From the NCBI GenBank assembly GCA_002794465.1, contig MTSL01000065.1, positions 110,450-142,449 of the forward strand: a stretch of DNA of 32,000 bases. The letters run 5' to 3'. Source of the DNA: Paramicrosporidium saccamoebae KSL3. Taxonomy: Eukaryota > Fungi > Cryptomycota. The notes below the pieces were generated by a model, which worked only from the letters and a program-made list of their open reading frames with translations, had not been told where the DNA came from and made no database searches. Below, piece by piece: positions 5,667 to 32,000 of this stretch; position 1 is the stretch's first letter; each line of letters begins with the position of its first letter. A program made the position numbers and the translations under genes.

Positions 5667-5758
5667 TCAATCATGTAATAAAGCTGTATAATTTTATGCA
5701 TGATTCATGATAATGGGTCGGGTTCTTGAACTCGACTTTCCATGCAACTCCCAGGGTA

Positions 5759-6001
5759 ATGGGCCTGTCAGGGCTGCAGAAAGAGGTACTCCAACTGTAT
5801 AGACAATTCCAGCGCACAGTCCACCGACGCAGCATGGGGGTGCAGACAAGTGAGTTTGTGAGAATAGAATTTGAACGCAACAAAAACATACCTCTCCGAG
5901 ATGTCTCTACTATTGAGTATTTGCTACGCCGCGGTCGAGGTCAGCTAGAATGGTTTCAGAAAATGGATGTCGGGAATGTACAGCATTGGTACCCACGATA
6001 A
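5759..6001 (+). CDS. SDH6: LYR-motif succinate dehydrogenase assembly factor 1 (SDHAF1/Sdh6)
   Basis: LSGLQKEVLQLYR, IEYLLRRGRGQLE motifs; ATG at 5759. Confidence 0.85.
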   Translation: MGLSGLQKEVLQLYRQFQRTVHRRSMGVQTSEFVRIEFERNKNIPLRDVSTIEYLLRRGRGQLEWFQKMDVGNVQHWYPR

Positions 6002-6014
6002 TAAAGTCTATTCA

Positions 6015-9000
6015 TCAGGGGCGATCTAAAATATCGTCTATAGCCGTGCGTCCCGTTGACCTTGACTCAATCGGCTTGGCGGAGTCTCTATTTCGTACAG
6101 GCAGGCCCCCCTGTTGTTGATGTACAATCTTCTTCTGGGTGGCAGTCTAGAGTTACAGTAAGGTAGACCATCTTACCTGAATGACAGTAGGTGCTTTCAC
6201 GACAGGCAGCTCAGCGGGACGGCTATTGTCAAACTTTCTGGCGTACAAGTTCATCGGTCTGCGTGCCCTCGCTGCATCATCCCATGTCCTGGAATTATAG
6301 GGGACGAAACAGTCTCTGGCCTTGGAATCATCAACCATTGCCTTCCAGATTGGATTTTGGATCAACGTCGAGACCTTTCCCAAGACGAACAATGAGCATT
6401 TGGCACGTGTAAGCGCCACATTGAGACGCCGTGTATCATTCAGGAAGCCAATCCCCTTATTTTCGCCGGTACGAACACACGAAAATATAATCACCTCTCG
6501 CTCCTGTCCCTGGAAGCCGTCCTATTGAATTAACCACAGGCAAATGCCAATCTACCACGGTGCTAATTTCAATGGCTCGTAGCGCCTCGTGCCCGAAACG
6601 GTGAGAAATTTCGCTTTTCAGCGCTCTCCTCTGGTCTCTGTAAGGGGTCACTATGCCAATCTTTCCTGCCATCTACAGCGATCAACAACCAATCCACCTC
6701 CTGGGTACCTCAATGTTAGGAGCGCTATGGCAGATCATGGAAATTAGATCGGCAGCGATCCGAGCCTCCGCTGCATTCATCTTTGACCGACTCTCCACTC
6801 CCGACTGACGCTTCCATGTTCCCTCACTACCCGAAACATCAAATAGTCTAAACGGACCCAATAGCCGAGTGCTATGCCAAGGTCTCTTATTAACCGACTC
6901 CATGGATGGCCCATCAACGAGATGGCCTTGGTAAAAGTAGCTGTTGGGAAACCTGCTGATTTCGGGATGCATTCGATACTGAGTGTCCAAGAGAAGAACA
7001 CTCTCGGGACACTGCTTCTGCAATCTTACAAACAGACTTTGCTCATAGGAAAAGACTCCGGCCATTTGAGAAATCACTGTCGGTGGAAGCTGATTCGGAT
7101 CTAAAATAATTAGCAACAGCTTGCGGATACCGCCAACAAGAATGCACTGACGACAATTGTGTTGAAGTGGAACAAGACAACTAAGCTCCACCGCCTGGCA
7201 GGCTTCGTCAATGATTAAATAGTCAAAGTCAATACGGGACAAAATGTCATGGCCACTACTGCTCAAAGTGCAGCAGACAATTTGTGCATCACCCAGAATT
7301 TTCTTCCTCAAGTTGGAACGTGTATCGTCAAGAAACTTTGTGTTTTTGCGCACATTCTCCCTTGCCTCCCAGAGCAAAGTCTTGAGCGACTTTATTTGAT
7401 CTTCACGACGAGCCTGTTCTGCATTGTGCAAAGAATTCTTCAGCTCATCACATGATCGGCGTTGCGTTTCCAAAAGCTTGATGCTATTTGCTGTTGAGGC
7501 TGCAAGCAGTGCATCCACCTGGCTATCCAAAGTCAGATCCTTAACCTGATCTGATATCATATCTAAAGAGCCAATTCGTAGAATCTTGGTTTTAAATCTA
7601 TGGCCCGCTCCCGACACCAGACCATGTCGGATCCTTCGTACAATCTCGTCAATTGCCGCATTTGATGGCGCACAAATCATGACCTTGGTCTTATTATCTA
7701 CACCCACTCGCCCTAACAGAACCCCTAACAGAGCCTCAATGGTCTTTGTTTTCCCGGTGCCAGGGGGACCTTGGATCAGAGTGATGGGATTGACGTTTTG
7801 GACGACGGCGCTGATGGCTCGGGCTTGCGACATGTTAATGTCCAAGGCTTTACTAATCCCACCCAGTTCAGTAGAGACTCCAATGGCCTTAACCGACGCC
7901 AATTTTGGTGAGAATATCGCAGGCGCTAGTGTCAGATGACCCACCATATGCATGGCCGTGTACTCACGCAGACTTGTAATTACATTTCCAATTTTTTGGA
8001 ATTTCAACTTTAGACCCTCTCTCAACTCAATCTGCACGGCTGCCTTTTCGTTTGGAATAGACAACCGAATGACAATCTCCAATACTCCGCCCTTTGTCCC
8101 AGACTGCACTATAATTGCAGTCTGGGTTTCGCGAGGATTGTCAAAAAATACAATCAGATAGTCTTGATCGCACATCCAAACTCGATCATCATCTCTGTCG
8201 CGGTCATCCTGAAGCACCACCTCATGAAAGTCATCCACATGAGCAACACCCGCAATCCTTAGCGACAGAGTCTCATTGTTAACCGATTCTTCTCTTGAGC
8301 GGGCAAGCTGTGCACGGCACTCAATGAACAATAATGGCTCGAAAATGGAAGTGTAGTGTGCAGCATCAGCAAAGGTGCCAGGAACATTACAAATTGTAGC
8401 GTCATCAGGCAGAGACTCAATATCGCCCAGATTAAAGTGCAAAATCGTCCTATGGAACTGCCGGATGAGATTTGTTTCAGTGACATGGCCCATGCTGTCG
8501 CTTTTTGATGTCCCTTTCTTGTTGTTGGAACCCTCAGCCAGATCAATGAGCTTCACAGAGCGGTTAGCAATCGGAATATCTAATGGGACAGCAGGCGTCT
8601 TGGAAAAACCCAGACCGCCATAGTCTTCATCCGGATCCGATTCGCTAGTACTACTTCGAATATACTCAATTTTTTGAGGCTTATTAATTGGCCCGGATAT
8701 CCCTCTCCTCTTCGGTACAGGCGGTGCATCTCGGATCGCATCAGCTCGAAGTTGTCCAATCTTTGTCATAGGCTTGAGAGCTATTGGGATCACGTTGCTT
8801 CGAAGCGCCACCGGCAAGGCTCGTTCACGACGACGGTCCTGTGCACTATTAAATTCACTAAGGGCATGCTTCTCAACATCTTCATCAGTAAACAGAGGCG
8901 GCCGCTTTCCAGACAACTCGGCTTTGGCCGGGTCGGCTGGTGGCCTTGGAAGGATAATCGAGGTCGCCATTTCATAACTGTCTATGTAATTATTCAATCT

Positions 9001-12381: not shown

Positions 12382-13591
12382 TTATTGGACATATCTTCTA
12401 GGAACATACCCTTCCTTGCCGTCCTTTTCTGCGAGCCACCATTCGGGGTCCTCTCTAGTTATGATCCGCAGCTGCTCTCCCTTGAGGAAACTCAACTCGT
12501 CGTCTTGATAGTTGTCCTCGTTGGCGGCGTCAAAGTCGTACAATGCAGTGACTCTGCCGGAAGAGTTTTTCCGGCGAACAGCCTCCCCCAAGACTCTGAT
12601 CACGTCAAAATCGGTGGCGAGTCCCAAGGGCGCCTGTCCTTGCGAATCCATGGCCTCCACGTCGCCACCATGGGAAAGCAATATATCGGTAATTTGTAAA
12701 GAATTAGTATAAGCGGATGAGTGAAGTGGCGTCCAGCCATTGTCATCGCACACATTGACATTTGCTCCCTTATCGACCAAATACTCAACCATGTCCTGTC
12801 GAGACATTCCGGCAGCGCAATGTAAAGAAGTGACTCCATCAGCATTGCAAGTGTCTGGATGTAGCCCCTCATTCTCTATCAAATGCTTTACCTCTTCAAA
12901 GTCTCCCTCCAACGCGGCCTCCAACAGACACGCAAAGCTGTTGAAGCGAATCTTTCTCTCGCGCTTAACCGGCGCAGTTCCTTTCCGCAAAGTCAATTTA
13001 TCTTGAAGCTCCTCAATCTTTTCCTGACAGCCCTCTACACACTCTGCCGATTCGACGGGACAATCTTGAGCGATAGCTTCAGGATTTCCTTGTTTTTTCA
13101 GAGGCAAAGGGGAGGCTGCTGAGCCGTTTTGCAGTTTCATTACGTGTATGGGTAGACATCTGAGCGGAGACGATGCCCTCAGCGTGTTTACATATTCCGG
13201 CAGTGCTTCGCTGACATCACTATCGTTTGTATCCACCGAAAAGTCTTTCCGGTGGCTTTGAGGGGATTGTCCGTCCAAATCCGCCTCAATAATCTTTTCT
13301 GAATATAATGTTATGGCACTTTTCAGCAAATATGCATCCGTCTCGATTCCGACAGTCTCCCGCGCGATCGAAATGGTCTCTAGTCTCTCAACAATACGCA
13401 TCTAAACATCCAGCAGCATGTTTGTATTGTACCATTGTATTAGGAGAGGGCATGTTGTTTCCTTCTGTCTGCCGTCCAGCCTCGTCGGTACGACTGGTCG
13501 TGAACATGCTACGTAGCTGAGATATCCAACTTTCCTTGCGAACATGACCTGGATCCGCAATGGAGGGAGGGTTGCTGTCGTCGATCCGCAT
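12382..13591 (-). CDS. RxRF-ankyrin-SH3 protein, ASPP/iASPP-like PP1 regulator
   Basis: Exons ~13591-13433 and 13401-12382, intron 13402-13432 (31 nt). RKIRFNSFACLLEAALEGD, ankyrin repeats (GVTSLHCAA, GWTPLHSSA), C-terminal SH3 (ALYDF...DELSF...WW...GYVPRRYV). 5' end uncertain. Confidence 0.75.
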
Positions 13592-14041: not shown

Positions 14042-15070
14042 CTACTTGGACTTTTTAACGGGTCGGTAAACACCAACTACGAGGGCATGGTCACGCTCAT
14101 ACGGCTCTAGAGTAATCTGTTCCTGAGGCTTGATGCGCTCTTCTTGCAGCTTCTTGACCTCACGGGCAAACACGGTTGCCGCATCCACAGTGGAATCAAT
14201 GCAGTTGGCCTTGATGGAAATGACAATGTGACCACCAATCTTTAGGAAATGGTGTGCATTCAGGGCAATAATACGGGCCTGGTCAGGCTGGGCAACGTCG
14301 GCAAAGATGACATCAACCATTCCAACGAGCATGCGATAGCGCTGCGGATGTCTGGCATCCTCAATGATGGGAATGACGTTGGTGCGCTTCTTTGCGACAT
14401 TGATAAGGTCACGACCGGAACGATGGGAGAACTCTACGGCGTAGACAAGACCGGTGGGGCCAACAACGTCAGAAACATGGGATACGGTGGTTCCAGAGGC
14501 GGCTCCGAGATACAACACCTTCTTTCCGGGTGCAATGTGAATGTTCTCAACACCTCCCAAAATACCCGAAGCCAACTTGCTTCGGAAGGGATTCCAGACG
14601 CGATACTCAACCTTGGTGCCATCAGGCTGATCAACACTGATGCGCTTCTCATTGTATACGGATTCTCCGGGAACCATGTTGCGTGTGACAAGCAAATCTT
14701 CCTTTCCACGGGCAATGAAGACACCTTCGTGACGATGCGGCTCAACAAGCACTTTGCTGCCGCCCTTGGCACCAAGACCTCCACGTCCACCACGGGCTCC
14801 GCCACGGCCGCCAAAGCCTCCACGGCCAGCACCTCCGCGACCTCCACGGTCTCCACCAAAGCCTCCGCGAGAACCGCCGAAACCTCCACGAGAGCCTAAG
14901 TATGAGTTAAAAAAATTGGACATTTGGCGTACCACCACGGCCGCCGAAGCCTCCGCGACCACCACCGCGTCCTCCACGGTCGCCACCAAAACCGCCACGT
15001 CCTCCACCAAAACCGCCACGTTCACCTACAGATAAGAGATACAGCAGACTAGATGAGTACCGAAACCCAT
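14042..15070 (-). CDS. NOP1: Fibrillarin, box C/D snoRNP 2'-O-methyltransferase
   Basis: Exons 15070-15061, 15025-14933, 14895-14042 (introns 35, 37 nt); GAR domain, [40 protein letters not shown]. Confidence 0.97.
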
Positions 15071-21312: not shown

Positions 21313-22775
21313 ATGCCACCTTATATGAACGGGAATCGTGTGCTGGAAGAAGAGGAACGCATATCGCTTGAACTAGTTGATGTGAACCGGTCCCTGTCTG
21401 ACATTTCGCTCGATGAAGTGGCTTCCAGTGTACCTGTGCCGTCTACGGAGGACCTGGGAAAAGATTTTGGGTGGTTAGAGCCTCCAGTGACAAGGTTGCA
21501 TCTCATAATGATGGAGGAGCAGGTCAGTCCGCCGAGCATTGACATTTGCCACAATATGATCTTTGACACAAAGGTGAAGCTTTTGATGCAAAACTTTTCT
21601 ATTCACGATCCCGACAGTATCAAGCGGTCCGAGCAGTACTGGGATGCGCTGCAACGAGAAATTGTCCTTCTGGGCGACCGTGCTGCGCCTTATGATAGCG
21701 GCGTGGCAATCTTGCCAAAGCTGTTGGATGAAATGAAGAGCATGCTGACATATTTGTACCCAGAGTCAAAGTTGATGAAGGAGAATTTACTGGAGAATCT
21801 TGATGCAGCTTTTGTGGTAGAGCAGATTAAAATTGGGAATACCGACGCAATGAGTCTTGCTGTGCTACTCGGCACCATCCTAAAGGCCAATTGCGCTCCC
21901 AAGAGAGACGGGATGATTGAGCACATGATGATGTTGGGCGGTGAAGGGAATTGGATTGGGATGCTCAAGCTGTGCTTGGAGCTGATGGAGTTGATGAAAC
22001 TGGTATGTCTTGATTGTTAGAATTGACAGTTTAGGACCTGTTGAATTACAGATTATCCAAGAACCGCAAGAACATTATCAAGGGCATTGTTGAACGTGAG
22101 AAGCAACACTTTGCGAGTCTGTTTAATTCTAAAATCCTCAGCCTGGAGTCTACTAAAAAATGGCTTTCCACGGCGAAAGCTGAGGAACAAACCCCCAATG
22201 TGCCGCTTCGAGGATTTGTAAACCTGGTGCTCTGTTGGACCGGACTTGGTATCCCCGAGACGTTTGCGCTGGACGCACAACGATTGCTTGAAATTCGCGA
22301 CTCGTTCCAGGACATTGCCATTATAACGTGTGCCTTGGTGATTCTGAAACACTGGACCAAGCGTTCGCTGAATAAGATGGCCTTGGATGAAATCAAGACA
22401 AGACTGAAAAGATGCCTATCGAATCAACAAACCAAGATTGATGATATTGGAAACCAGATCCTGTTGGTTGCGAGCCGAAGAAGGGGGAGTGCTATCAATA
22501 AAGCTGACCGGGAGCTGCTGCTCAAGTCTGTGGACAGGATACTCCATCCTGACAACGCACTATATTTGATGCTGAAACACCGGCTGGGATCAATCCTGAA
22601 GAGCTCCCTGGAGGGAAACACCATCTCTGACAGCGCGTACAAGAAAGCTGGACTAGAATTGATCCAGGCCGATATTGAAGCGCTCGTTGGCAACACTAAG
22701 CAGCTGTGGACAGTCAATTACAAGATCCATGGAGAGCTCTACCGGAGATTGCTAACCGAGCAAGAGATTCTTTGA
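21313..22775 (+). CDS. T-complex protein 11 (TCP11/Sok1) family protein
   Basis: Intron 22003-22034 (32 nt) yields MKLDLLNYRL; YWDALQREI, CAPKRD, IPETFALDAQRL, VNYKIHGELY motifs. Confidence 0.8.
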
Positions 22776-26596: not shown

Positions 26597-27655
26597 ATGG
26601 GAGCAACATATCCCAACTCTCCTGCATTGTCCAACAAACGCAGCACCTCGAAGGGCGCCGAGTCAACCGGGTCAAACGGGCCGAAGCGTGTCTTCGCCCA
26701 GGAAGCCATTCTCAATGGTGGACCAAACAGGACGCCCATCATGCCCTCGCTGAATGAATATATGGAGACAACCAACCAATATCCGGAACGGCGCATATCG
26801 CAGCGCGACCCCTCTCCCGCCCGCTCATCAGAAAGTGACGCATTAGGGGGCTCCGAAGAGGATAGTGAGTCTGGAACGGGCATAAATCAGCCAACTATGA
26901 TGCTCAAGCCAGAAAACGGTCCGTCCACAGTTATATTAGGCGCTGCCATCCCCGAAGGCCACGACCGTCGACAAGCCCACATTGCCAGCGAGCAGAAGCG
27001 GCGTCAGAGCATAAATGAGGGCTTTGAAGACCTCCGTCGAGTCATTCCATCCTGCACTGACACTTCGGACAGCAAGGCAGTCGTCCTTCGGAAGGCAGTG
27101 AACTACATCCGTCTTCTCCAGAGCGACCCGGCCCGACATAAGGCGATCCCACAGTATGAGCAAAGAGGCCAATCGCCTGTGGGATATGCTGCAGGACCTT
27201 CTTCGCTGCGAACAGGCTATGGACCCGCATATGGGATGCAATATGGCGGACAGTATGTCATGCAGCCGATGGGCATGAATAGTCCGCCTATCTATCATGC
27301 GTCCATGATGTCGGCGCCGCCAACACATAGTAGTGCATCGATGGGAAACCCAGCAGGACATTCCTTCGTGCGGATGCACCATCCTACGCCTCAGCAGCTG
27401 AGTGGTAGACCAATGTCGGGCTATACCGGCCCTCAACTGCCACCCATGCAACATCCCCCTACCACTCTGCCCCCTCTACAGCTCCCCTATTTGGAAGGCA
27501 ATGAAGCGCCCTACAATCGGGAAGATTATGTATCGGCAGCTTCCTTATCAATGCTACGCCAGGATGCGGGGCTGCCCTCGATAGGTAATGTTCCCGGAGA
27601 GCAACAGGACCAGTCTTTCCAAAATCCCCCTTTTGCGCACAACGACTGTCAATAG
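26597..27655 (+). CDS. bHLH transcription factor, Max/Mlx-like basic region
   Basis: [28 protein letters not shown]...[16 protein letters not shown]; Pro/Gln/Met-rich low-complexity C-terminus. Confidence 0.85.
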
Positions 27656-30627: not shown

Positions 30628-32000
30628 TTATTTTAAATGTCGCAGGATAACCTCTTCTGGTGGAGAGAGAGTGATTCCACATTCACTGATAGCGTCTCTT
30701 AAATACAAGACAAAGGTCCTCGTCCTTCTGGTCCGTAGTTCTTCATCTTGGAAATTCCCACGGTGGAAAATGTGGACATTAATCGTCATAGTGTCATGGT
30801 TGATGATTGTAAATCCGCCTAAATTCAACTTTGGCAAAAAATCTTTGCTATTCTTTTGAAGAAAGGCACAAAGCTTGGCCTCTAGAGCGACAATCTTATC
30901 GTTTGGTGTTGAAGGGACCACGTTAAATTTGATTCGCTCGCTCTGGAAGGGAGATCGCCGGTTGTTAATGATCATCTCATTGCGTAATTTGGAGTTGGCA
31001 ATGTATGTGACCCGGTACTGTGGACCCAAAAAGGTAGAGGTCCAAAGGCCCAACTCTTTGACGTAATGAACTTCGTTGCCAATGATCACCTGATCGCCCA
31101 CGTCAAATGGATGGGTAAAGATGACAAAGACAATTGACTCAAAGGCCGTCTTCATTGTTCCGGTAGCCACCGCCAACACTAATCCACCAATGCCCGTCAG
31201 TGCTGCCAGGACTGTCCGCAGCGAGACCTGGAACAGCATAAGCCAGCTCAATGCTGCCACGGCCCACACAAAGACCAGAAAGAGTTGATCCAACTTTCCA
31301 ATGACGTTATCTTGGTCGAGTAATGACATTCGCAAATCTTCGCGTTCCGAGTAGGAACGTGCTATTGCGCGTTCAAACTGTTCATAATTCATGTCGCCAG
31401 TTGCCTCGGTGTCAATGAGACCAAAATAGCGTTCAGCATCAGCAGTAGGGAGATGCACTGCAATGTCTGACATGGAAATTGTCTCGCGGTGGGAGGGACA
31501 GAGACGCTTGAAGATTATTTTGGATTGGGTCTTTTCGTCGCCATGATCTTGGGCGACCGCAACAGCGAGGCGTTTCGTAGTCTTGAGGGCAAATTTGTTG
31601 TCTTCCAGACGACGTCCAAAGGCTCGTTTGTAGAATGTGGTCGAGATGCGTTGAATGATAACCTTTTCGACAAGTATTAGGGCAGAGAGGACAAACAGAG
31701 AGGCGGCAGCTCGGTTGACAATGAACTGGAGGGAATGTCCCGTGCTGTAGGCCTTTAAATAATTAGTGATGGAAAGACCACTTAATTTTTCGGCCGCCTC
31801 CCCCGCCGTACTGCCAGCCTTTATCTCGCCCAAGCTAAAGAGTGCCTGTGCCTGCTCATCCAAGGTCAGCGGGAACAGCCAGAATGAGGTCAGAAGCAAG
31901 ACGAGTGTCTCCGTAAAGTAGGCTACATATTTGTAGAGAAAGATCATCTGATCAAAACCTCGCTGGACCTTTTGTGGAGCCTCCTTGCCACGTAAACTGT
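30628..32000 (-). CDS. MscS-like mechanosensitive channel (fungal Msy1/2 type), 5' end beyond the window
   Basis: IVFVIFTHPFDVGDQVII, VKELGLWTSTF, IINNRRSP motifs; EF-hand-like DTEATGDMNYEQF; multiple hydrophobic helices. Confidence 0.85.
   Translation of the reverse strand, partial: SLRGKEAPQKVQRGFDQMIFLYKYVAYFTETLVLLLTSFWLFPLTLDEQAQALFSLGEIKAGSTAGEAAEKLSGLSITNYLKAYSTGHSLQFIVNRAAASLFVLSALILVEKVIIQRISTTFYKRAFGRRLEDNKFALKTTKRLAVAVAQDHGDEKTQSKIIFKRLCPSHRETISMSDIAVHLPTADAERYFGLIDTEATGDMNYEQFERAIARSYSEREDLRMSLLDQDNVIGKLDQLFLVFVWAVAALSWLMLFQVSLRTVLAALTGIGGLVLAVATGTMKTAFESIVFVIFTHPFDVGDQVIIGNEVHYVKELGLWTSTFLGPQYRVTYIANSKLRNEMIINNRRSPFQSERIKFNVVPSTPNDKIVALEAKLCAFLQKNSKDFLPKLNLGGFTIINHDTMTINVHIFHRGNFQDEELRTRRTRTFVLYLRDAISECGITLSPPEEVILRHLK

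What the first reader, a model, noticed from the sequence alone, without database searches (positions are those of the whole stretch)
12382..13591. ASPP/iASPP-like RxRF-ankyrin-SH3 protein in a fungal-type genome
The C-terminal ~190 aa show the architecture of metazoan ASPP proteins: an RVxF-type PP1 docking motif (RKIRF; ASPP2 has [12 protein letters not shown], here RKIRFNSFACLLEAALEGD) directly before ankyrin repeats, then a terminal SH3 ending EGYVPR. ASPP proteins are known from animals as p53 regulators and PP1 targeting subunits in polarity and junctions. They are not standard in Dikarya, and fungi lack p53. An orthologue here would suggest an ancestral opisthokont, p53-independent PP1-ASPP module, or host-derived transfer. 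The comparison is from my recall of the family, not from an alignment.
Basis: partly seen in the sequence, partly recalled or inferred. Interest (0 to 1): 0.7.

Follow-up and report, generated by a model that had tools for sequence, protein, structure and literature searches.

The report
ASPP-type PP1 adaptor outside animals
This gene encodes a short protein whose last 190 residues match the PP1-phosphatase-binding end of the animal ASPP proteins (docking motif, four ankyrin repeats, terminal SH3 domain), in an unnamed fungus-like organism, which suggests that this phosphatase-binding module is older than animals.

Summary
On the minus strand, 13591..12382 is a two-exon gene (31-nt intron) for a 392-aa protein. 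Its C-terminal 190 aa are RKIRF, four ankyrin repeats and a terminal SH3.

Among solved structures, only ASPP2 and iASPP match the whole module in one stretch (about 102 bits). BLASTP to animal ASPPs gives 35-36% identity over 200-240 aa (E 4e-32). The AlphaFold model (module pLDDT 93-98) superposes on ASPP2/iASPP at about 2 Å over about 200 residues; these fill the top 13 PDB hits.

The residues ASPP2 uses to hold PP1 are conserved in all or nearly all 26 relatives: the RVxF phenylalanine, two acidic ANK1 residues, and the SH3 groove.

The relatives are all unnamed metagenome or raw-assembly proteins. The five neighbourhoods I looked up share one gene order. They form their own branch outside animal ASPPs, so recent transfer from an animal is unlikely.

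Three limits apply. Only the C-terminal module is ASPP-like: there is no RA domain, proline-rich region or long coiled coil. The SH3 alone is generic. The host lineage is not Dikarya but could not be placed (RNR1 is 72-75% identical to early fungi, 71-73% to arthropods). PP1 binding is inferred, not shown.

The parts
13433..13591 (-). Exon 1 (residues 1-53), predicted disordered. It carries a conserved basic-Ser-Trp motif, VRKESWISQLRSMF.
   Evidence: The ORF starts at the ATG at 13591. It stays open in L006 with mostly synonymous changes. The motif is shared with P0008, P0009 and P0012.
13402..13432 (-). 31-nt intron, GTACAA...TTTAG.
   Evidence: It is a GT..AG interval that restores the frame and keeps the conserved RIVERLE residues. 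It is conserved in L006. Introns of the same size occur in the Tcp11 and SEN1 genes. Acceptors at 13387 or 13378 are not excluded.
12382..13401 (-). Exon 2 (residues 54-392 plus the stop codon).
   Evidence: It is a 339-aa ORF. It holds the Pfam Ank and SH3 domains.
12958..13401 (-). Rest of the N-terminal region (residues 54-201). It is mostly disordered, holds short conserved motifs (GIETD, HRKDFSVDTNDSD, SPLRCLPIH) and has no detectable domain.
   Evidence: pLDDT is below 50 over most of it. The motifs are conserved in alignment A2. pN/pS against L006 is 0.37, against 0.095 for the module. Pfam finds no hit there.
12943..12957 (-). RVxF-type PP1 docking motif RKIRF (residues 202-206).
   Evidence: It is the only RVxF-type match in the protein. 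Among 26 relatives the F is kept in 26 and the I in 25, and the flanks are basic. It aligns to ASPP2 RVKF and MYPT1 KVKF. It lies at the junction between the disordered region and ANK1 in the model.
12562..12942 (-). Four ankyrin repeats (residues 207-333). The first helix of ANK1 carries the acidic positions that correspond to ASPP2 D932, E936 and E938.
   Evidence: Pfam Ank_2 E 7.8e-35. The model shows four helix pairs: 208-230, 245-263, 278-296, 311-333. Position F+8 is acidic in 26 of 26 relatives and F+14 in 26 of 26. The roles of these residues in ASPP2 come from PMC6377682.
12385..12558 (-). C-terminal SH3 domain (residues 335-392), ending at the stop codon.
   Evidence: Pfam SH3_1 E 1.9e-12. 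The strands lie at 336-387 in the model. The groove residues are conserved: ALYDF, the RT-loop D-E, WW, and P-x-x-Y/F. The domain packs on the repeats as in ASPP2/iASPP.

Best explanation
The gene encodes a small regulatory (targeting) subunit of protein phosphatase 1, built on the same module as the C-terminus of the animal ASPP proteins.

Proposed mechanism, all inferred by homology:
1. The exposed RKIRF motif inserts into the hydrophobic RVxF groove of the PP1 catalytic subunit.
2. The acidic face of the first ankyrin repeat contacts the basic Lys260/Arg261 patch of PP1.
3. The terminal SH3 domain, held rigidly against the repeats, captures a PxxPxR-type proline motif in the flexible PP1 C-terminal tail.
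4. The roughly 200-residue disordered N-terminus, with its few conserved short motifs, supplies localisation, substrate or regulatory contacts.

The module is homologous to the ASPP module, not a chance look-alike. It sits in a non-animal, fungus-like lineage where p53-family proteins are not expected. Its job there should therefore be PP1 control, not p53 regulation.

Shown here: gene structure, domains, collinear homology, predicted fold, conservation of contact residues, purifying selection, synteny. Inferred: every binding step.
For: - Sequence: iASPP (6dcx_C, 2vge_A; about 102 bits) and ASPP2 (4a63_B; 101 bits) are the only PDB chains aligned in one stretch over query residues 135-337. 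BLASTP to fish ASPP gives 35% identity over 201 aa (E 4e-32), and to an invertebrate ASPP 36% over 240 aa.
- Family profile: after the family's own members, all named full-coverage ANK+SH3 hits are animal ASPP1/2/PPP1R13B.
- Fold: AF2 module pLDDT is 93-98. The top 13 Foldseek PDB hits are all ASPP2/iASPP, with TM 0.79-0.85 and rmsd about 2 Å over about 200 columns. The next class, DARPins, covers only 125 columns.
- Contact residues, taken from the ASPP2-PP1 crystal structure (PMC6377682), counted in 26 relatives: RVxF F 26/26 and I 25/26; D932-equivalent acidic 26/26; E938-equivalent acidic 26/26; RT-loop E 26/26 and D/E 25/26; both W 26/26; P 26/26.
- Selection: pN/pS is 0.095 in the module against 0.37 in the N-terminus, versus the closest relative.
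- Vertical descent: the gene order fibrillarin, this gene, F-box/LRR, SEN1 is the same in the window and in all five relatives whose context I looked up, which span both subfamilies.
Against: - No binding was tested.
- No PP1 gene lies in the window, and the genome's PP1 tail could not be read.
- The SH3 alone scores no better against ASPP than against Grb2, Src or myosin-I SH3 domains.
- The RVxF-ANK1 segment aligns to MYPT1 nearly as well as to ASPP2: 13.7 against 17.3 bits.
- The SH3 RT loop is 6-7 residues longer and the n-Src loop about 3 shorter than in animal ASPPs, so ligand preference may differ.
- AF2 may reproduce the ASPP inter-domain packing from training once it recognises homology.
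- The RA domain, proline-rich region and long coiled coil of ASPP1/2 are absent.
Confidence: 0.68

Rival explanations
1. Convergent assembly. An RVxF-ankyrin PP1 regulator of the MYPT/PPP1R16 kind gained a C-terminal SH3 independently in this lineage. It would work like an ASPP without sharing descent with it.
For: The RVxF-ANK1 spacing is the same in MYPT1, and MYPT1 aligns through the motif. MYPT1 is rank 18 in the fold search with 35% identity. The SH3 has no ASPP-specific sequence signal.
Against: The repeat number (four) matches ASPP, the SH3 follows the repeats directly, and the ANK-SH3 packing superposes on ASPP at about 2 Å. The acidic ANK1 positions that ASPP2 uses are present here, while MYPT1 has Ala and Ser at two of them. 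No MyPhoNE motif is present. The one-stretch alignment covers both domains.
Confidence: 0.12
2. Horizontal transfer. The gene was acquired from an animal host or prey and then trimmed to the C-terminal module.
For: The family is seen only in a narrow, unnamed set of organisms. All full-length named relatives are animal proteins.
Against: Identity to animal ASPPs is only 28-43%, while animal ASPPs share 48-95% among themselves. The family lacks the animal-specific ANK4 insert and C-terminal extension. In an NJ tree the animal sequences form a clan in 200 of 200 bootstraps, with the family outside it. Two deep subfamilies occupy the same syntenic slot. The gene has a host-type 31-nt intron. A very ancient transfer cannot be excluded.
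Confidence: 0.06
3. A generic ankyrin-SH3 scaffold that does not bind PP1. The RKIRF would be conserved for structural reasons as the N-terminal cap of ANK1.
For: Short RVxF-type matches are common by chance (my own knowledge). No PP1 partner was identified here.
Against: The motif is basic-flanked and invariant at F, and it lies in a low-confidence (exposed) segment just before the fold begins. The two acidic residues that bond PP1 Arg261 in ASPP2 co-vary in presence with it (PMC6377682).
Confidence: 0.12

Closest known systems
ASPP family C-terminal module (human ASPP2/TP53BP2, ASPP1/PPP1R13B, iASPP/PPP1R13L; Drosophila ASPP; C. elegans APE-1)
   Same: It has an RVxF-type motif directly before ANK1, four ankyrin repeats, and an SH3 packed on the repeats at the C-terminus. 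The acidic ANK1 patch and the SH3 proline-groove residues are conserved. Identity is 35-36%, the alignment is collinear, and the predicted fold lies within about 2 Å.
   Different: - The protein is only 392 aa.
- It has no RA/ubiquitin-like domain, no proline-rich region and no long coiled coil.
- The link between ANK4 and the SH3 is shorter by about 7 residues.
- The RT loop is 6-7 residues longer and the n-Src loop about 3 shorter.
- The protein ends right after the SH3 (...VQ*), without the animal LGLYPR... extension.
- The host is not an animal, and p53-family partners are not expected in fungi (PMC6981761).
MYPT1/PPP1R12A (myosin phosphatase targeting subunit)
   Same: It has an RVxF motif at the same distance from the first ankyrin helix. 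It is an ankyrin-based PP1 regulator that also engages the PP1 C-tail.
   Different: MYPT1 has eight repeats, a MyPhoNE motif and no SH3, and it reads the PP1 tail with its ankyrin repeats. Here there are four repeats, no MyPhoNE and a terminal SH3.
Generic SH3 adaptors (Grb2, Crk, Src-family SH3)
   Same: The SH3 sequence is canonical and scores about the same against these as against ASPP.
   Different: They match the query only over its SH3 domain; none aligns to the ankyrin repeats or the RVxF motif.

Membership tests
ASPP (ankyrin repeats, SH3, proline-rich protein) family | RVxF-type PP1 docking motif immediately N-terminal to the first ankyrin repeat | tested here: met
   RKIRF lies at residues 202-206. 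It has the same register as ASPP2 RVKF (F+8 and F+14 acidic, F+13 Gly). The F is invariant in 26 relatives.
ASPP family | Four ankyrin repeats followed directly by a C-terminal SH3, packed as one unit | tested here: met
   The model shows four helix pairs plus an SH3 at pLDDT 93-98. The top 13 PDB fold hits are ASPP2/iASPP, with TM 0.79-0.85 and rmsd about 2 Å. This is a prediction, not a solved structure.
ASPP family | Sequence closer to ASPP than to any other family over the whole module | tested here: met
   Only ASPP2 and iASPP are matched in one stretch across both domains in the PDB. All named full-coverage hits of the family profile are animal ASPPs. A strict reverse search, ASPP against this genome, could not be run.
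ASPP family | Acidic ANK1 residues and SH3 groove residues that contact PP1 in the ASPP2-PP1 crystal structure | tested here: met
   The D932, E938, D1074, E1075, W1097 and P1110 equivalents are conserved in 25-26 of 26 members. The residue roles come from PMC6377682.
ASPP family | Proline-rich region | tested here: not met
   The N-terminal 198 aa are 7% proline with no PxxP motif.
ASPP family (ASPP1/2 subgroup) | N-terminal RA/ubiquitin-like domain and coiled coil that recruits RASSF8/Ccdc85 | tested here: not met
   Pfam finds no RA hit, whereas a fish ASPP (P0112) scores 7e-41 for ASPP2-like_RA. Only one short helix (180-187) precedes the motif. A 705-aa relative from elsewhere (P0333) does have a roughly 100-residue helix, but no detectable RA domain.
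ASPP family | Binds the PP1 catalytic subunit | not testable with these tools
   No multimer prediction or experiment was available, and no PP1 gene lies in the window.
ASPP family | Binds p53-family proteins | not testable with these tools
   p53-family homologues are reported only from Holozoa (PMC6981761). The rest of this genome was not available to search.
MYPT/PPP1R12 family | MyPhoNE motif upstream of RVxF, about eight ankyrin repeats, no SH3 | tested here: not met
   There is no RxxQ[VIL][KR]x[YW] match. The protein has four repeats and a terminal SH3.

The most novel reading that the evidence does not exclude
The RVxF-ankyrin-SH3 device that grips both the PP1 catalytic core and its C-terminal tail was already present in the common ancestor of animals and this fungus-like lineage. 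If so, PP1 regulation is the original function of ASPP proteins. p53-family binding and the junction/polarity roles would be later animal additions, and Dikarya and most other sampled fungi would have lost the gene.
Probability: 0.5. Interest if true: 0.6.

Novelty: new variant of a known kind. Interest (0 to 1): 0.5.

Why it matters
ASPP proteins are studied as p53 regulators and as PP1 adaptors at animal cell junctions. In the papers I could search they are described only from animals.

A conserved, selected, minimal ASPP-type module in an organism outside animals, where p53-family proteins are not expected, would support PP1 control as the ancestral role. It would also give a naturally trimmed version of the module (about 190 aa plus a disordered arm) for biochemical study of how an SH3 domain reads the PP1 tail.

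The finding also flags a diverse, gene-dense lineage with introns of 31-36 nt. That lineage has no annotated genome among the sources searched.

Tried and rejected
- **Naming the organism.** RNR1 homologues place the window outside Dikarya, but only 72-76% identical to any named fungus. A single-gene NJ tree puts the unnamed clade outside all sampled fungi with weak support, 127 of 200 bootstraps. Paper searches for the assembly, run and sample accessions found nothing. The window holds no Rfam or tRNA markers.
- **SH3 plus last repeat as a family-specific probe.** In the PDB it ranks Grb2 and DARPins above ASPP. In the exhaustive library, multi-SH3 proteins crowd the list. Family members could still be picked out as single full-length tail matches at the C-terminus.
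- **Neighbouring Metallophos gene as the partner PP1.** Relatives have such a gene nearby. It is a divergent PP1-like phosphatase with no C-tail, and it is absent from the window. By my reading of those two translations against the PP1 sequence as I recall it, it also lacks the Lys260/Arg261 patch.
- **RA domain in the long relative P0333.** Pfam finds none, BLASTP to a full-length fish ASPP aligns only the C-terminal module, and the single-sequence AF2 model is unusable at pLDDT 40.
- **Literature on non-animal ASPPs.** Four searches found none. Absence from that library is not proof.
- **A caveat on the homology searches.** The search for homologous proteins appears to list only proteins up to about 1.7 times the query length. 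Long named ASPP-like proteins of other fungi or protists could therefore have been missed.

Full report
**What is there.** The finding's interval is a real gene on the minus strand. An ATG at 13591 opens a 53-codon exon, and a 339-codon ORF runs from 13401 to the stop at 12384-12382. The two frames differ by one base. A GT..AG interval of 31 nt (13432..13402) joins them and keeps the conserved residues RIVERLE.

Exon 1 is coding. The closest relative's genomic contig (L006) keeps it open, with an in-frame 3-nt deletion and mostly synonymous changes. Three distant relatives carry the same motif (RRDSWLAQVRxLF) within one continuous ORF. Such tiny introns are normal for this genome: Tcp11 has a 32-nt GTATGT...TTTAG intron, and SEN1 has two of about 34-36 nt. 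The product is 392 aa.

**Domains and chance.** Pfam gives Ank_2 at E 7.8e-35 and SH3_1 at E 1.9e-12, with nothing in the first about 200 residues. RKIRF (residues 202-206) is the only RVxF-type match in the protein. There is no MyPhoNE motif, no SILK motif and no PxxP motif upstream.

**Which family.** In a phmmer search of all PDB sequences, long ankyrin proteins and DARPins lead by summed score over many repeats. The only chains matched in a single stretch from before the docking motif to the end of the SH3 are iASPP (6dcx_C, 2vge_A; about 102 bits; query 135-337) and ASPP2 (4a63_B; 101 bits).

BLASTP against ASPPs recovered from the protein collection gives 35% identity over 201 aa (E 4e-32, fish) and 36% over 240 aa (E 6e-28, invertebrate). 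The alignments are collinear from RVxF to the last SH3 strand.

A profile of 18 family modules retrieves the family's own members first. After them, every named full-coverage ANK+SH3 hit is an animal 'apoptosis-stimulating of p53 protein 1/2' or 'PPP1R13B'. No other ANK-SH3 family and no named fungal protein appears.

**Predicted structure.** An AlphaFold2 model from the 16-sequence alignment is confident over the module (pLDDT 93-98) and disordered upstream. Foldseek against the PDB returns ASPP2 and iASPP C-terminal domains as the top 13 hits, with TM 0.79-0.85 normalised to the target and rmsd about 2 Å over about 200 columns. DARPins follow, covering only the 125-residue repeat part, and MYPT1 is at rank 18. 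The predicted ANK-SH3 packing is therefore the ASPP one.

**What does not discriminate.** The SH3 with the last repeat scores 47.5-48 bits against ASPP2/iASPP. It scores 42-50 bits against Grb2, Src and myosin-I SH3 domains. The RVxF-ANK1 segment aligns through the motif to ASPP2 (17.3 bits), iASPP (16.9) and MYPT1 (13.7), all weak. The assignment rests on the whole module and its architecture, not on either half alone.

**Functional residues.** The ASPP2-PP1alpha crystal structure paper (PMC6377682) names three contact sets:
- RVKF 921-924;
- acidic residues of ANK1, of which D932 and E938 bond PP1 Arg261;
- the SH3 residues W1066, D1074, E1075, E1094, W1097, P1110 and L1113, which hold the PP1 tail PxxPxR motif.

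In an alignment of 26 family members and 20 animal ASPPs, the family keeps:

| Position | Conserved in family |
|---|---|
| RVxF Phe | 26/26 |
| RVxF Ile | 25/26 |
| Basic residue at first motif position | 26/26 |
| D932 equivalent, acidic | 26/26 |
| E938 equivalent, acidic | 26/26 |
| RT-loop Glu | 26/26 |
| Preceding RT-loop Asp/Glu | 25/26 |
| Both SH3 Trp | 26/26 |
| SH3 Pro | 26/26 |

The model places RKIRF at the border between the disordered arm and the fold. That position fits a motif able to adopt the extended conformation in which ASPP2's RVxF binds PP1 (PMC6377682).

Against the closest relative, pN/pS is 0.095 in the module and 0.37 in the N-terminal part.

**Differences from animal ASPPs.**
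- The family lacks the animal ANK4 insert (...CEEDEEGF.GC...).
- Its RT loop is 6-7 residues longer and its n-Src loop about 3 shorter.
- It ends at ...VQ* right after the SH3.
- The window protein has no RA domain, while a full-length fish ASPP scores 7e-41 for ASPP2-like_RA.
- It has no proline-rich region.
- Only one short helix precedes the motif.

**Relatives and descent.** Word-indexed and exhaustive searches find only about two dozen relatives. All are unnamed proteins from Logan, JGI or ENA assemblies, plus one unannotated NCBI assembly, GCA_020047435.1.

In the window the gene sits between fibrillarin and an F-box/LRR gene followed by SEN1. The five relatives whose context I looked up show the same order, and they span both subfamilies. 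The subfamilies are therefore orthologues in diverging species.

In an NJ tree of the module, the animal sequences form a clan in 200 of 200 bootstraps. The window-type group is supported 200/200 and the P0014-type group 188/200. The family is not nested among animals. Identity to animals is 28-43%, against 48-95% among animals. Recent transfer from an animal is therefore unlikely.

A 705-aa relative (P0333, ENA) adds a roughly 100-residue helix upstream of RKIRF-ANK-SH3. No RA domain is detectable in it, and its single-sequence model is unusable.

**Host lineage.** The window's ribonucleotide reductase large subunit is 77-85% identical to unnamed metagenome proteins. To named sequences it is at most 72-76% identical, and the best of these are early-diverging fungi: chytrids, Paraphysoderma, Thamnocephalis, Umbelopsis and an aphelid. 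No Dikarya appear in the top 120.

In a single-gene NJ tree the unnamed clade is monophyletic (192/200). It falls outside the sampled fungi with weak support (127/200), and the window is nearly as close to arthropods (71-73%) as to fungi (72-75%). I therefore call it a non-Dikarya, fungus-like opisthokont of unresolved position. Other genes in the window are ordinary eukaryotic housekeeping genes.

**Mechanism and confidence.** By homology, the protein is most likely a PP1 targeting subunit that holds PP1 at three points: RVxF groove, basic patch and C-tail. Its disordered N-terminal arm would direct the complex. Homology of the module to ASPP is well supported. Each binding step is inferred.

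A PP1 tail with the Thr320-type CDK site, which lies inside the PxxPxR motif of human PP1alpha, is known from at least one fungal PP1, S. pombe Dis2, but not from Sds21 or Glc7 (bioRxiv 10.1101/190488; PMC6377682). A suitable ligand is therefore plausible in non-animal PP1s. I could not read the PP1 of this genome.

**Novelty.** I found no paper in the searchable library that describes an ASPP outside animals. No family member carries a name in any source. This is a new, trimmed variant of a known kind of PP1 regulator in an unexpected host, not a new kind of system.

Noticed in passing
window 22008-22039 (+); about 6520-6700 (-); 13402-13432 (-): Spliceosomal introns in this genome are very short, 31-36 nt, of the form GTA...TTTAG/TAG. 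Genes are packed a few hundred bases apart. This is unusual for fungi and may help identify the lineage.
   Followed up: partly
L001 17458-18411; L005 12455-13441 (relatives); syntenic gap in window about 5667-6152: Relatives carry a divergent PP1-like Metallophos gene between SEN1 and SNAP, 6-7 kb from the ASPP-like gene. It has no C-terminal tail. By my reading against the PP1 sequence as I recall it, it also lacks the Lys260/Arg261 patch. It is absent from the window (tblastn finds no hit).
   Followed up: partly
window 1-32000 versus L001, L002, L005, L007, L011: A long block of gene order is conserved across the unnamed clade: Tcp11, SGS, MRP-L20, SRP68, LYR, RNase PH, small GTPase, LUC7, fibrillarin, ASPP-like, F-box/LRR, SEN1, SNAP, then Rtf2 or SPRY. 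The clade forms its own RNR1 branch (192 of 200 bootstraps) that no named taxon joins.
   Followed up: partly
P0333 (705 aa, ENA contig of 31 kb; not in the window): This is a long form of the family. A roughly 100-residue predicted helix (350-449) precedes RKIRF-ANK-SH3, which recalls the coiled coil of full-length ASPPs. Residues about 133-205 look ubiquitin-like or RA-like by eye, but no tool supported this.
   Followed up: partly
L008 6001-6807 (P0393; JGI and ENA metagenomes, 34 index blocks): This is an ASPP-like ANK-SH3 ORF in a different, intron-rich organism with different neighbours. It is found in many metagenome samples. No RVxF is visible in the called ORF, and the true N-terminus probably lies across an intron.
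   Followed up: partly
window 13528-13545 (-), residues 16-22 of the protein: A conserved basic-x-Ser-Trp motif (VRKESW; RRRDSW in relatives) precedes a short predicted helix. It looks like a basophilic-kinase phosphorylation site and could regulate the adaptor.
   Followed up: no
window 14249-14899 (+), 14434-14889 (-), 14754-15035 (+): Long ORFs overlap the fibrillarin gene (14042-15025, minus strand) in other frames and on the other strand. They look to me like by-products of its glycine/arginine-rich repeat region, not genes.
   Followed up: no
window 26597-27655 (+); 30628-31947 (-): A bHLH transcription factor gene and an MscS-type mechanosensitive channel gene lie downstream of RNR1. 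As far as I know, MscS-like channels occur in fungi, plants and protists but not in animals, which argues mildly against an animal origin for the contig.
   Followed up: no
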